Positions 21,580-63,229 of a DNA stretch of 64,000 nt are shown here, in pieces. Source of the stretch: Malacoraja senta. Its lineage: Eukaryota. The DNA is taken from positions 145,576,001-145,640,000 of the forward strand of contig CM075977.1 of NCBI GenBank assembly GCA_038087875.1. The letters are read 5' to 3'. The translations under genes were made by a program, and so were the position numbers. The first letter of the stretch is position 1; every line of letters starts with the position of its first letter. A model generated the notes under the pieces. It saw nothing but the letters and a program-made list of their open reading frames with translations, made no database searches and was not told where the DNA came from.

Positions 21580-21724
21580 CTAGGGGCTAGCGGAATCAAG
21601 GGATATGGGGAAAAGGCAGGCACAGGTTACGGATTGTGGATGATTAGCCATGATCACAATGAATGGCAGTGCAGGCTTGAAGGGCCAAATGGTCTCCTCC
21701 TGTACCTATTTTCTATGTTTCTAT
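21580..21724 (+). mobile_element. CR1 3' tail fragment
   Basis: Matches 63110-63229. Confidence 0.8.
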
Positions 21725-34146: not shown

Positions 34147-34434
<288 letters not shown>

Positions 34435-34749: not shown

Positions 34750-34924
34750 GTGTTTTCAAGAGAGAGTTAAATTTAGCTCTCAGGGCTAAGGGAATCAAGG
34801 GATATGGGGAAAAAGCCAGAACAGGGTACTAATTTTGGATGATCAGCCATGATCACATTGAAAGGCGTTGCTGGCTCCAAGGGCCAAATGGCATACTCCT
34901 GCACCTATTTTCGATGCTTCTATG
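34750..34924 (+). mobile_element. CR1 3' tail fragment (further short copies at 34167-34217 and 50047-50142 on the minus strand)
   Basis: Matches 63075-63229. Confidence 0.8.
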
Positions 34925-36219
34925 ACCCAGCAACAGAGATAGACCAAAGTAACTCAACAAGGTTATGTCCAAAGCGTTCAATGTGGCACAAAAATCTCCC
35001 AAATCCTCGACCTCCAAAGAAACGTTCAAGCTTACTGACAAATGAAAAGTAACAATGCTTGCGAAAGATTTGGTACCATTTTGAAAATCTCAAAATGTCA
35101 TGTTGTTCTTAGTTCGCAAACATCCTACTGAGGCTTTGAGGTGTGCTACCAAATTCCAAAGGTGATGCAGGAACTCTTCCAAACACACCCCGGTGATGTA
35201 CTAATTGGTTTACTCCAGTTTTAATTAAAACACAATAAGGTCAAAAGGTAGCCAAAGCCCATGACTCATTAAAGATTTCATTTGATGGCCGTGATGAACA
35301 TAATTATTTTTACAATTTTCTTCTGAGCAATGATTTTACTGATTTTTATTCACGTCTTCTCCATGTGGATGATTGTCTATGATGTGGCTTCCATAACTTG
35401 TTTTAGCTGGGGTGCCGATCTAATCCAGGTAGCCCAATGAAAGTTAGATTTACTATTCTGCCACTGCTGCCCTGGCATCTAAACTAAGCAAGCATCAGAT
35501 AAAACACATTTTCAATTTGCAATTCAAAGTATCAAAAAAGGCAGCATTACCATAAATTGAAAAATGTTACTTTATTACATTGCATGCCTCCAGATGATTT
35601 TAAAAACACAAGTTTTTGTTCTATTTTGACAGTTTGAAATACAGTCCAGATATGGAAATTAAAAATCCTTACAAATTCTGTACAGGATAAGGTTACATAA
35701 AAAGCAAGCACTCTGACATTAGGTACCCAGCTCTGAAAGAAACCTATTTAATTCCCTTTCCTGAAAAAAAAGTCTTTATGTGATTGTATTTTAAGTTACT
35801 CCAAGGAACAGTTCACGTAATCCAACTGCTGAGTGAAAATCTGCAGTAAATGTGTTCTGCAGACATTTTGGGGTCATATCTACCTCTTTATACTAGTGAC
35901 ATTTTCAAGCGTTCTTTTTTTAAAATTGGAAAATCTAAAATTCAGAGTTTGATCTAATGAATCAAACACAAAGTTACTGCACTGCCAACCGCGATCAGAA
36001 TTTGAAATACTCCAATAAGATTTTAGCATTTGACTTTGTCGAGTGAATGAAGACTGACCCATCTGTAAATAGAGTATTCATGTTTCTTGGTGGAAGGTTA
36101 TTAATAAAGCTAATCTCTAAAATGAAAAATGATCTGTTGGATACCCCATGGAATAAATTACTAGCCTTAGTAAATTTAACTGACAAGGCTTTTCTTCTTA
36201 ATTACTTGATTTTATATTA

Positions 36220-49410: not shown

Positions 49411-50655
49411 CTTCTTCTTCTTCTTCTTCTTCTGAGGTTATCCCTCAAAATTCAGGATAAACTGTTCCAGCTTTTTTTCTGGGTTGAGCAATCATGCAGC
49501 ATTTGGGCTGCCTAATGAGACCAATGTGGGAACGGATGACTCTTCTACAGATGGGGCTTACAGGGCTGGTAGATGGGTAGTTTGAGATAAGGATATCTGT
49601 ATGCAGGGCCTCTGTAACTTCAGATAAACTTGGAACTCTTTCTCAAAACCATTCCAAATGCTCCTCTGCTTTGAGTGGTCTCAGAGCATAGATTCCGAGG
49701 AGCTGGTGGAGGTGTTGCCTTCCTTCAAGGCGTCTTTGAGCACATGCTTGAACATTTCCCTTTGTCTGCCTGAAAACTAACTTCTCAGCTTCCTGAACCA
49801 TGCGTTCAACGTCTTCCTTGCTGAAGCGACACTGGTTGTTTGTGATGGTGATCTTATTTTCGTTTCCAGTATGATTTGGGAGCCTGGTACCAAGCATGTG
49901 AATAACATGCTCTGCTGAATATATCCAATTGAGTATAACTGGTGTCTCAATAAAAAGAATATTGGCCTAAAAGTAGACACTGACATTGATTCATTTGATA
50001 ATTCCAGTGAATTTGGAGCGGTGGCTTTGGTGTTATTTTTCCAATCTTAGAAACACAGAAAATAGGTGCAGGAGTAGGCCATTCTGCCCATTTAGCCAGC
50101 ATCGCCATTTAATATGATCATGGCTGATCATCCAAAATCAGTGGATGTATATTGTAAATAATCCAGGCCTCAGAAGAGCATGGAAGGTGGGGATCACTGC
50201 AGTCCTGTATTCTATGATTTTGATGCCAGGGCTGAGGTCTTGATCTGCAGATTCCCTTTTTTCCCCAGTGAAAGACTCTGCTGATGTATCGAAGGCAATA
50301 GTAAATCTCATTGTCTTCTATGAGAGGTAGCTTCTGAGCTATGGGAATTTGTCCCTGTTTTCCAGGGTCTCAACGTGAAACATCATTGGAGAGCAAAGAC
50401 AAGGTAATAGGGGATTGCTGTCTTGTGGATGTTGATTATAAAGGTCTATTCTCTCATATACTTCATTGAATGAGTCAGCGATGGCTAGAGCTTAGCTTCC
50501 AAATATGTGCAAATGCATGCACAGGATAACCTTGGTCTTGAAGTGTAGTTGCTGAAGGTTGAATAGCTTCTCTTTAGTTCTGAAGGATAGCAACACTCCC
50601 ATGGGAAATTGATTAGAGGCGAGGTGCAACTATGTTGTCAGATAGATTCAGAAAA
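49411..50655 (-). mobile_element. Older RTE-clade LINE remnant with (GAA)n tail, containing foreign insertions
   Basis: GAGGTTATCCCTC near 49434 matches GAGGCTATCCCTC of the 56730 element; decayed TRLPN...GRQREMFKHVLK; left end at (TTC)n 49411-49433; right end approximate. Confidence 0.55.
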
Positions 50656-50687
50656 GGGTTGAGCAATCATGCAGCATTTGGGCTGCC
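49481..50687 (+). repeat. Perfect 32-nt direct repeat (49481-49512 and 50656-50687)
   Basis: GGGTTGAGCAATCATGCAGCATTTGGGCTGCC occurs twice, 1175 nt apart. Confidence 0.95.
49781..49870 (-). pseudogene. 90-nt HSP70-family (HSC70/HSPA8-like) coding fragment
   Basis: [30 protein letters not shown] versus HSPA8 [30 protein letters not shown] (24 of 30 identical, from recall). Confidence 0.9.
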
Positions 50688-50870
50688 CACTCACGTGGAC
50701 TAAAAAAAAGAATAAATAAAATATCCCATGCCACCATTCCCATAGAACATGTATTGTGTCTTTGCTTGTATTGACTATTCAATCATCATCACTAAAAGAG
50801 ATTATCTGAATATCTCATTGCTATTTATGGGAACTCACTACTTGAAAACTGGCTGCTGCATTTCCAACTG
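50683..50870 (+). mobile_element. Deu-domain SINE remnant (SacSINE1/AmnSINE1-like)
   Basis: ATCCCATGCCACC...CATCACTAAAAGAGATTATCTG...ATCTCATTGCT...TGGCTGCTGCATTTCC resembles the recalled DeuSINE core. Confidence 0.5.
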
Positions 50871-56729: not shown

Positions 56730-57420
56730 ACCTCGCCGAGGCTATCCCTCGAGGTCGAGGATGATGGTCTACATTCCGTTGTTTTTATGGACTCTCAGGT
56801 GGCTTACGAGTCCAATCCTGGCTTTGAAAGTTCTTCGGCATTCAGGACAGGTAATTCCAGATGGCAGATCGGGCTTTGGCTGTTGCTGCCTCTCTTTCCA
56901 TTTTCTTCTCTTTTCTAATTCTGCGCATCTGTTGGCTTTGAAGGTCGCTGTTCCTTCTTGAATGATGGTTCGCCAGAGTTTCCTGTCCTTGCATTGGTTT
57001 CCCAACTGTTGATTTCACATTTCTTCATGCTGGCTTAAGGCGTCTTTGAATCTCTTCTTTTGTCCGCCTCTTTTATGTTTGCCTTCTTTAAGCTGGAAGT
57101 AGGTTTGCTTTGGTAGACGCTCGTCTTCCATCCGAACAACATGACCGACTCATCTTGATGACGGAGGCTTCGATGCTAGATGTTTTTGCTTCATTCAGCA
57201 CGCTGATGTTGGTTCTTCTGTCTTCCCAACTGATATTTAAGCTGCTTCGAAGACATCGTTGATGGAACTTTAAGTGTTTTCAGATGGCATCGGTATGTTG
57301 TCCAGGTTTCTGATGCATACAGGAGCGTTGGAATCACCACTGCTTTGTACACTAACATTTTGGTGTCTGTTCAGATGTCACGATTTTGAAAGACTCGTTC
57401 GAAGACGTCCAAAAGCTGTT
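56730..57420 (-). mobile_element. RTE-clade LINE 3' fragment with frameshifts
   Basis: RMEDERLPKQ...GKHKRGGQKKRFKDAL and terminal CPECRRTFKARIGLVSHLRVH zinc finger. Confidence 0.82.
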
Positions 57421-62513: not shown

Positions 62514-63229
62514 GGGGAAGTACAACGGGATCTGGGGGTCCTTGTTCATCAGTCACTGAAAGTAAGCATGCAGGTACAGCAGGCAGTGAAAAAAGTGAAT
62601 GGCATGTTGGCCTTCATAACAAGAGGAGTTGAATATAGGAGCAAAGAGGTCCTTCTGCAGTTGTACAGGGCCCTAGTGAGACTACACCTGGAGTATTGTG
62701 TGCAGTTTTGGTCTCCAAATTTGAGGAAGGGCATTCTTGCTATTGAGGGAGTGCAGTGTAGGTTCACAAGGTTAATTCCCGGGATGGCGGGACTGTTATA
62801 TGTTGATAGAATGTATAATCTGGGCTTGTATAATCTGGAATTTGGAAGGATGAGAGGCTATCTTATTAAAACATAAGATTATTAAGGGTTTGGACACGCT
62901 CGAGGCAGGAAACATATTCCCGATATTGGGGGAGTCCAGAACCAGGGGCCACCCAGTTTAAGAATAAGGGGCAAGCCATTTAGAACGGAGATGAGGAAAT
63001 ACTTTTTCACACAGAGAGTTATGAGTCTGTGGAATTCTCTGCCTCAGAGGGCGGGGAAGGCTGGTTCTCTGGATGCTTTCAAGAGAGAGTTAGATAGAAC
63101 TCTTAAAGATAGCGGAGTCGAGGGATATGGGGAGAAGGCAGGAACGGGGTACTGATTGTGGATGATCAGCCATGATCACATTGAATGGCGGTGCTGGCTC
63201 AAAGACCTACTCCTGCACCTATGGTCTAT
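62514..63229 (+). mobile_element. CR1-clade LINE 3' fragment (ORF2 C-terminus plus 3' tail)
   Basis: RDLGVLVHQSLK...LYRALVRLHLEYCVQFWSP...EGVQCRFTRLIPGM; tail GATCAGCCATGATCACATTGAATGGCGG...CCTGCACCTAT. Confidence 0.9.

What the first reader, a model, noticed from the sequence alone, without database searches (positions are those of the whole stretch)
49781..49870. A 90-nt piece of HSC70 coding sequence patched into a dead RTE LINE in PTCH1 intron 2
Seen: 30 uninterrupted codons matching HSP70 (TGNENKITITNNQCRFSKEDVERMVQEAEK), with no poly(A), no evident TSD and no other HSP70 sequence nearby. The flanks read as RTE ORF on both sides (..TRLPNH | ..GRQREMFKHVLK), and roughly 10-12 RTE codons seem to be missing at the site. 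The ENK and KED residues are HSPA8-like. By recall, vertebrate HSPA8 has an intron inside NDKG|RLSK; this fragment spans that point, implying a spliced-mRNA template. Inference: RNA/cDNA-templated double-strand-break repair or a double template switch by a LINE RT. An internal mRNA snippet with deletion is unlike an ordinary processed pseudogene.
Basis: partly seen in the sequence, partly recalled or inferred. Interest (0 to 1): 0.72.

Follow-up and report, generated by a model that had tools for sequence, protein, structure and literature searches.

The report
Spliced HSC70 mRNA patch in LINE
A 91-base piece of spliced heat-shock-cognate-70 messenger RNA was copied back into DNA and now sits as filler inside a dead jumping gene in a skate PTCH1 intron: a real, old, single-site scar of a kind already known from mammals, with no sign of function.

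Summary
On the minus strand, 49780-49870 encodes 30 codons that are 24/30 identical to HSC70 residues 495-524 (E 1e-9). It is the only HSP70-like segment in the window.

The patch lies in sense orientation inside the ORF2 C-terminal tail of a decayed LINE. It replaces about 10-11 LINE codons and has no poly(A) or target-site duplication.

- **Not multi-copy.** Only the locus itself covers the middle of the patch in two skate genomes, and seven public contigs carrying the chimera are orthologues of this site (0.3-1.7% apart, about 4.5% from the window).
- **Parent has an intron there.** Skate genomic contigs match only 49780-49826/49830. A trout hsc70 gene has a phase-1 intron in codon G508, and its exon 8 starts at the base that aligns to 49830.

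The template was therefore spliced RNA. One junction has a 3-5 nt overlap and the other has 2-6 orphan bases.

Most likely explanation (about 0.55): break repair using a reverse-transcribed mRNA patch (class 2 templated insertion). Main rival (about 0.3): a double template jump by the LINE's own reverse transcriptase. The patch evolves at the neutral rate. It is a new member of a known kind.

The parts
49780..49870 (-). Patch copied from spliced hspa8-type (HSC70) mRNA: codons T495-K524 plus the first base of codon 525, in the same orientation as the LINE
   Evidence: 24/30 aa identical to HSC70; only HSP70-like segment in the window. Present in all orthologous contigs.
49830..49831 (-). Exon 7 | exon 8 junction of the parent, contiguous in the patch (49831 = last base of exon 7, 49830 = first base of exon 8)
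   Evidence: Trout gene L008: exon 7 ends ...AAA G|gt and exon 8 starts ag|GT CGT. Unspliced L008 aligns as two separate pieces, 49830-49780 and 49870-49839. Skate genomic contigs stop at 49826-49830 (records 7, 16, 24).
49866..49870 (-). Junction overlap (ACT, possibly ACTGG) that fits both the LINE and HSC70: 3-5 nt of microhomology
   Evidence: LINE homology reaches 49868 (record 8; RLPNHT against RLPKQT). HSC70 homology starts at 49870. One unpatched LINE copy's loose end reads ..CCAAATTCTACTTGG.. (table 7).
49774..49779 (-). Orphan filler (2-6 nt) between the end of HSC70 homology and the resumption of LINE homology
   Evidence: HSC70-type pieces end at 49780. Other LINE copies diverge from the window at 49772/49773 (tables 7 and 8).
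49871..50044 (-). LINE ORF2 tail upstream of the patch (..HQ..NxSV..AN..IE..HVIHM..TRLPNH), decayed
   Evidence: Repeat pile-ups at 49868-49915 and 49972-50015.
49434..49773 (-). LINE ORF2 C-terminus (GRQREMFKHVLKDAL.., a C2H2-like CxxC..IGL remnant) and 3' UTR with a GAGG-loop-CCTC hairpin
   Evidence: Pile-ups at 49507-49559 and 49706-49773.
49412..49433 (-). (GAA)n microsatellite tail marking the 3' end of the LINE; shorter in the orthologues
50045..50142 (.). SINE-like repeat inserted into the LINE; also present in the orthologue L004
   Evidence: Four other copies in the window at 81-85% identity.
50143..50790 (-). Further upstream remains of the same LINE (reverse-transcriptase end, ..QxxxxxSTLF.., ..YRTAVIPT..). 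Read by eye against the second copy; too decayed for Pfam.
   Evidence: Pfam found nothing.
49643..49897 (-). 84-codon open frame running from the LINE through the patch into out-of-frame LINE; 82 aa in the orthologues. Not under constraint.
   Evidence: Substitution rate is the same as in the flanks.
49486..49520 (-). Second, younger patch found only in the window species: 27 nt copied from 50661-50687 plus 8 orphan nt, replacing 4 nt, with a 5-nt overlap (GGGTT on the + strand, 49481-49485 = 50656-50660)
   Evidence: (table 5/5c joint in X2).

Best explanation
After the LINE had landed in the PTCH1 intron, the DNA broke inside the LINE's ORF2 tail. About 30 bases were lost. The gap was closed with a 91-base piece reverse-transcribed from a spliced hspa8-type (HSC70) mRNA. 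One end joined through a 3-5 base overlap (ACT/ACTGG) and the other through a few orphan bases. This is break repair with a reverse-transcribed patch: a class 2 templated sequence insertion, also called RT-product-mediated repair. The scar was fixed before the skate lineages sampled here split and has drifted neutrally since. Shown: the HSC70 origin, the single locus, the shared ancestry, the junction anatomy and the neutral rate. Strongly indicated: spliced-RNA origin. Inferred: that the event came after the LINE inserted, and which enzyme copied the RNA.
For: HSC70 identity. Spliced origin: skate genomic contigs match only the exon-8 part and stop at 49826-49830; the trout gene has its phase-1 intron at exactly that base. 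Single locus: over 49840-49861 the depth equals the locus contig alone in both genomes, and all 7 public contigs are colinear orthologues. No poly(A) or TSD. A small local deletion of about 10-11 codons, sized by a second LINE copy. Overlap at one junction and orphan bases at the other. These are the features that define class 2 insertions (PMC5110952) and the capture of spliced mRNA at breaks in mouse zygotes (PMC4516963). The same dead LINE carries a second, species-specific templated patch with the same junction style (5-nt overlap plus 8 orphan nt), so break-and-patch events did happen here long after the LINE died. Earlier notes on this genome describe similar scars.
Against: The patch is in the same orientation as the LINE and lies inside a LINE. 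Random break repair gives that only about one time in eight by my rough estimate (assumed LINE share of the DNA times one half). Nothing here dates the patch as younger than the LINE: patch-to-parent mismatch (3/51 and 6/47) and LINE-to-LINE mismatch (6-9 per 44-51) overlap. No species with the LINE but without the patch was found, and the search that found the orthologues could only find patched ones. The skate intron was inferred from an alignment break that coincides with a cluster of substitutions (NNQC for NDKG).
Confidence: 0.55

Rival explanations
1. Double template jump during the LINE's own insertion. While copying LINE RNA from its 3' end, the reverse transcriptase left the LINE RNA at the position of 49773 and added a few bases. 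It then copied 91 nt of a nearby spliced HSC70 mRNA and returned to the LINE RNA about 30 nt further upstream through the ACT(GG) overlap, carrying on for another 900 nt or more.
For: The patch is in the sense orientation of the LINE and lies inside it. The direction of synthesis fits: orphan bases at the departure junction and microhomology at the return junction. Single and double template jumps by LINE enzymes are documented (PMC2104539; 10.1101/2025.02.02.635956). Patch and LINE decay are compatible with one age.
Against: Known LINE chimeras are end-to-end fusions in which the enzyme does not return to its first template. A return to the same RNA within about 30 nt needs a special constraint, whereas a small deletion is what break repair gives by default. 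No target-site duplication for the whole element was identified. The same LINE shows a later patch that cannot be the work of its own insertion.
Confidence: 0.3
2. DNA-templated copy. The 91 nt were copied during repair or replication template switching from an HSC70 processed pseudogene that has since been lost or has decayed. RNA was then involved only one step earlier.
For: The younger 35-nt patch in the same LINE was DNA-templated from 1.17 kb away. A MITE patch noted earlier in this genome was also DNA-templated.
Against: No contig in two skate genomes spans the exon junction at 80% likeness or better, apart from this locus. Contigs can miss copies, so this is not proof.
Confidence: 0.08
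3. TE-borne capture. The chimera arose in a LINE master copy and was spread as a subfamily.
For: None beyond the location inside a LINE.
Against: Depth over the patch centre equals one locus in both genomes. The word search found one protein cluster only, and all of its contigs share this site's unique flanks over up to 2 kb.
Confidence: 0.03

Closest known systems
Class 2 templated sequence insertions (TSI/TSIP) of the human genome (PMC5110952)
   Same: A short piece templated from a distant transcribed locus. The donor is kept. There is no poly(A) and no TSD. Junctions show microdeletion, microhomology and orphan bases. Some donors are spliced cDNAs. The insertions are germline and heritable.
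   Different: This one is in a cartilaginous fish, is old and fixed rather than polymorphic, and lies in sense orientation inside a LINE, which keeps a LINE-enzyme origin open.
RT-product-mediated break repair in mouse zygotes (PMC4516963)
   Same: Capture of intron-less mRNA fragments at breaks with 1-7 nt microhomology at one or both ends. One reported capture is a 50-bp cDNA piece.
   Different: Those breaks were made by Cas9 in the laboratory. Here the break is natural and only inferred.
LINE chimeric retrogenes made by template switching, including tripartite ones (PMC2104539; 10.1101/2025.02.02.635956)
   Same: Parts lie in the same orientation and are fused directly. A cellular RNA is copied by a LINE enzyme. 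Double jumps are documented.
   Different: Known chimeras place the foreign RNA at the 5' end and are flanked by TSDs. Here the foreign piece is internal and the LINE resumes about 30 nt upstream of where it stopped.
Processed pseudogene of HSPA8
   Same: Derived from spliced mRNA.
   Different: Only 91 internal bases are present. The mRNA 3' end, the poly(A) tail and the TSD are all absent.

Membership tests
Class 2 templated sequence insertion / RT-product-mediated break repair | Insert is templated from a distant locus that is itself retained | tested here: met
   HSC70 match. A single-copy-depth genomic contig with the exon-8 part is still present in both skate genomes (records 7, 16, 24).
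Class 2 templated sequence insertion / RT-product-mediated break repair | No target-site duplication, no poly(A) tract | tested here: met
   Read directly. The flanks resume LINE sequence on both sides.
Class 2 templated sequence insertion / RT-product-mediated break repair | End-joining marks: microdeletion, microhomology, orphan bases | tested here: met
   About 30-33 nt missing by the spacing of a second LINE copy. ACT(GG) overlap and 2-6 orphan nt. The deletion size rests on a different LINE family as yardstick.
Class 2 templated sequence insertion / RT-product-mediated break repair | RNA intermediate (intron absent from the insert) | tested here: met
   Trout intron in codon G508. Unspliced trout gene and skate genomic contigs both end at window 49830/49826. 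The skate intron itself was not read.
Class 2 templated sequence insertion / RT-product-mediated break repair | Recipient existed intact before the event (an empty allele is known) | not testable with these tools
   No unpatched orthologue was available. The reads and run-search tools were at their caps.
LINE template-switch chimera | Parts in the same transcriptional orientation, fused directly | tested here: met
LINE template-switch chimera | Foreign RNA forms the 5' part and the whole is flanked by a TSD | tested here: not met
   LINE sequence resumes upstream of the patch for about 900 nt. No TSD was identified.
Processed pseudogene | mRNA 3' end with poly(A) tail, and a TSD | tested here: not met
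   only residues 495-524 are present.
   The RT remains are too decayed for Pfam and no LINE reference library is on hand. The word search on the flank found nothing. The tail motifs, a C2H2-like finger (weak Pfam hit in the second copy, E 5e-4), a 3' hairpin and a (GAA)n tail do not decide between RTE and the CR1/L2 group.
HSP70 family (for the patch) | Significant match to HSP70 at colinear positions | tested here: met
   PDB E 1e-9 at residues 495-524. Pfam PF00012 at profile 488-516 but 13 bits against a cut-off of 20.6, as expected for 30 residues.

The most novel reading that the evidence does not exclude
A CR1/L2- or RTE-type LINE reverse transcriptase jumped from its own RNA onto a cellular mRNA and back again within about 30 nt during a single insertion. 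That would leave an internal host-mRNA patch, a product class not catalogued among LINE chimeras, which are end-to-end fusions.
Probability: 0.3. Interest if true: 0.5.

Novelty: new member of a known kind. Interest (0 to 1): 0.36.

Why it matters
It is a clean, dated, germline-fixed case of reverse-transcribed spliced mRNA used as filler DNA in a cartilaginous fish. This extends a repair scar documented in human polymorphism data and mouse zygote experiments to a distant vertebrate lineage. It is also a rare genomic change that marks the common ancestry of the skates that share it. It has no visible effect on PTCH1 and no sign of function, so its value is as a mechanistic example. It could also seed a genome-wide count to show whether such patches come from break repair or from LINE enzymes.

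Tried and rejected
- **Chance or assembly artefact:** rejected. E is 1e-9, and the patch is present in independent public runs of several coded organisms.
- **Multi-copy LINE subfamily:** rejected.
- **Intronless parent:** not supported.
- **Function or exonisation:** the 82-84-codon frame is kept in all orthologues, but the patch (4.4%) and the rest of the frame (5.2%) diverge like the non-repeat flank (4.4%). No RNA holder was found, and a small run of the source organism laid nothing.
- **Getting the LINE family sequence across the site:** nucleotide and translated self-searches of the window found only a distant second copy. The word search with the flank found no candidate.
- **Fetching the skate hspa8 gene itself:** the representative search returned mostly transcript-like fragments. 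The homologue search listed bony-fish and tetrapod proteins but no skate. Two look-ups were not on record. A trout gene was used instead.
- **Pfam on the RT remains:** nothing found.
- **Bacterial promoter/terminator scan:** irrelevant here.
- **Dating patch against LINE:** the mismatch counts overlap, so there is no answer.

Full report
**What is there.** The minus strand of 49781-49870 reads TGNENKITITNNQCRFSKEDVERMVQEAEK with no stop. Against all PDB chains the best matches are HSC70 (E 1e-9; 24 of 30 identical; chain residues 495-524). HSPA1A, HSPA2 and BiP rank below it. A trout HSC70 protein searched against the whole 64-kb window hits this segment alone (E 4e-9). Pfam places it at the right part of the HSP70 profile but below threshold, as expected for 30 residues. 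Nucleotide homology runs one base further, to 49780. No A-run and no adjacent direct repeat flank it.

**The host element.** On the same strand, the sequence upstream of the patch reads ..HVIHMLGTRLPNH in the patch's frame. Downstream, in another frame, it reads GRQREMFKHVLKDAL.., then a CxxC..IGL remnant, a GAGG-loop-CCTC hairpin and a (GAA)n tail at 49412-49433.
- A second, 5'-truncated LINE in the window (about 57360-56769) has the same order of motifs: HVVRMEDERLPKQT, twelve residues, GGQKKRFKDAL, then a C2H2 finger (Pfam zf-C2H2 E 5e-4).
- Contigs of other copies pile up on 49507-49559, 49706-49773, 49868-49915 and 49972-50015, so the flanks are repeated-element sequence.
- Upstream, the element is interrupted by a SINE-like repeat (50045-50142). 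It then continues with reverse-transcriptase remains to about 50790.
- By the second copy's spacing, 10-11 LINE codons (30-33 nt) are missing at the patch.
- I could not decide between RTE and the CR1/L2 group. The RT is too decayed for Pfam, no LINE library is available, and the word search on the flank was empty.

**Genomic context.** PTCH1 exons lie on the minus strand, with an exon-3-like exon at about 46530. The site is in the intron upstream of that exon. Exon 2 was not found inside the window.

**One locus, shared by related skates.**
- A word search with the 107-codon frame found a single cluster of 82-residue proteins that carry LINE-HSC70-LINE.
- Their seven retrievable contigs (L001-L007) align end to end with the window. 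The alignment runs past the (GAA)n tail into unique intron sequence, over up to 2 kb.
- These contigs are 0.3-1.7% apart and about 4.5% from the window.
- The run search lists seven coded organisms that hold the stretch or parts of it.
- With contigs of two organisms laid at 80% likeness, the depth over 49840-49861 equals the locus contig alone.
- The chimera is therefore not multi-copy, and the event predates the split at about 4.5% neutral divergence.

**The parent has an intron where the patch is continuous.**
- In both skate genomes one further contig, at single-copy depth, matches the patch only over 49780-49826 (organism A, 6 mismatches in 47; seen in two runs) or 49780-49830 (organism B, 3 in 51). 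The match is internal to contigs of 1.4-3.2 kb that run on as unlike sequence.
- A trout hsc70 gene (L008) has exon 7 ending ..AAT GAC AAA G|gt and exon 8 starting ag|GT CGT CTG. This is a phase-1 intron of about 720 nt inside codon G508.
- The unspliced trout locus aligns to the window as two separate pieces: exon 8 from its first base to 49830-49780, and the end of exon 7 to 49870-49839.
- The skate contigs thus stop where exon 8 begins. The exon-7 part (40 nt, about 33 after trimming) is too short to be laid.
- Caveat: three substitutions (NNQC for NDKG) sit at the same spot and could trim a local alignment. However, a contiguous parent should still have aligned through to 49870, and none did.
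- I rate spliced-RNA origin at about 0.85.

**Junctions.**
- LINE homology reaches 49868 (record 8; RLPNHT against RLPKQT) and HSC70 homology starts at 49870. ACT, perhaps ACTGG, is therefore shared.
- On the other side, HSC70 homology ends at 49780 and other LINE copies diverge from the window at 49772/49773. This leaves 2-6 orphan bases.

**Mechanism.** Both candidate mechanisms write the + strand in ascending coordinates from an RNA template, so the junctions do not separate them.
- For break repair: the small local deletion is its default outcome. The feature set is the definition of class 2 templated insertions (PMC5110952) and of spliced-mRNA capture at breaks (PMC4516963). The same dead LINE also bears a younger patch, specific to the window species, with the same junction style.
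- For a jump by the LINE enzyme: the patch lies inside a LINE and in its sense orientation, and double jumps are documented (PMC2104539). However, known chimeras do not return to the first template.
- Patch-to-parent and LINE-to-LINE mismatch counts overlap, so relative age is open.
- I put break repair at about 0.55, the double jump at 0.3, a DNA template from a lost retrocopy at 0.08, and TE-borne capture at 0.03.

**Function.** None is indicated. Between the window and L002 the patch differs by 4.4%, the rest of the open frame by 5.2%, and the non-repeat flank by 4.4%.

- Some protein hits listed are mammalian, and one (P0032) is a GFP-HSC70 construct. They were only displayed, and no contig of theirs was fetched.
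- In one search a local script joined the ends of trout exons 7 and 8 for a pairwise count (70/90). The conclusion rests on the unspliced, exon-by-exon comparison.
- The PTCH1 motifs used came from memory and served only as leads.

Noticed in passing
window 49486-49520 (donor 50661-50687): Second templated patch in the same dead LINE, present only in the window species. It has 27 nt identical to a stretch 1.17 kb upstream in the same orientation (the LINE's own RT motif region), entered through a 5-nt overlap (GGGTT, + strand). This is followed by 8 orphan nt and replaces 4 nt that all seven orthologues keep. It looks like a polymerase-theta-type or replication template-switch scar.
   Followed up: partly
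window 50045-50142; also 34828-34925, 21629-21723, 63151-63222, 34168-34238: About 98-nt SINE-like repeat with five copies in the window (81-85% alike). One copy is inserted into the LINE studied here and is shared with orthologue L004. Public contigs break at it.
   Followed up: no
window 56769-57360, minus strand: 5'-truncated LINE of a different family with an intact 78-codon C-terminal frame that ends in a C2H2 finger. It shares the 3' hairpin GAGGGATA(A/G)CCTC with the patched LINE, which suggests a common 3' recognition element.
   Followed up: partly
records 7/24 against record 16 (window 49780-49830): The exon-8-like genomic contig of the source organism differs from the patch at 6 of 47 bases, but that of organism B at only 3 of 51. 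This is more than expected between orthologous coding exons of species 4.5% apart. Skates may have two hspa8-type paralogues, only one of which is the parent.
   Followed up: no
proteins P0013-P0017, P0021: Several public open frames consist of an internal HSC70 fragment (around residues 470-560) flanked by unrelated sequence. They could be retrocopy pieces, other patches or chimeric transcripts in other animals.
   Followed up: no
window about 46530, 45849, 40087, 27844, minus strand: PTCH1-like exon translations ([25 protein letters not shown].., ..CFWEGA.., ..[17 protein letters not shown].., ..[14 protein letters not shown]..). They confirm that the gene runs on the minus strand, in the same orientation as the LINE and the patch.
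   Followed up: partly
window 48830 and 48435 against L002: 21-nt and 8-nt insertions in the orthologue relative to the window, in the non-repeat flank; ordinary indels.
   Followed up: no
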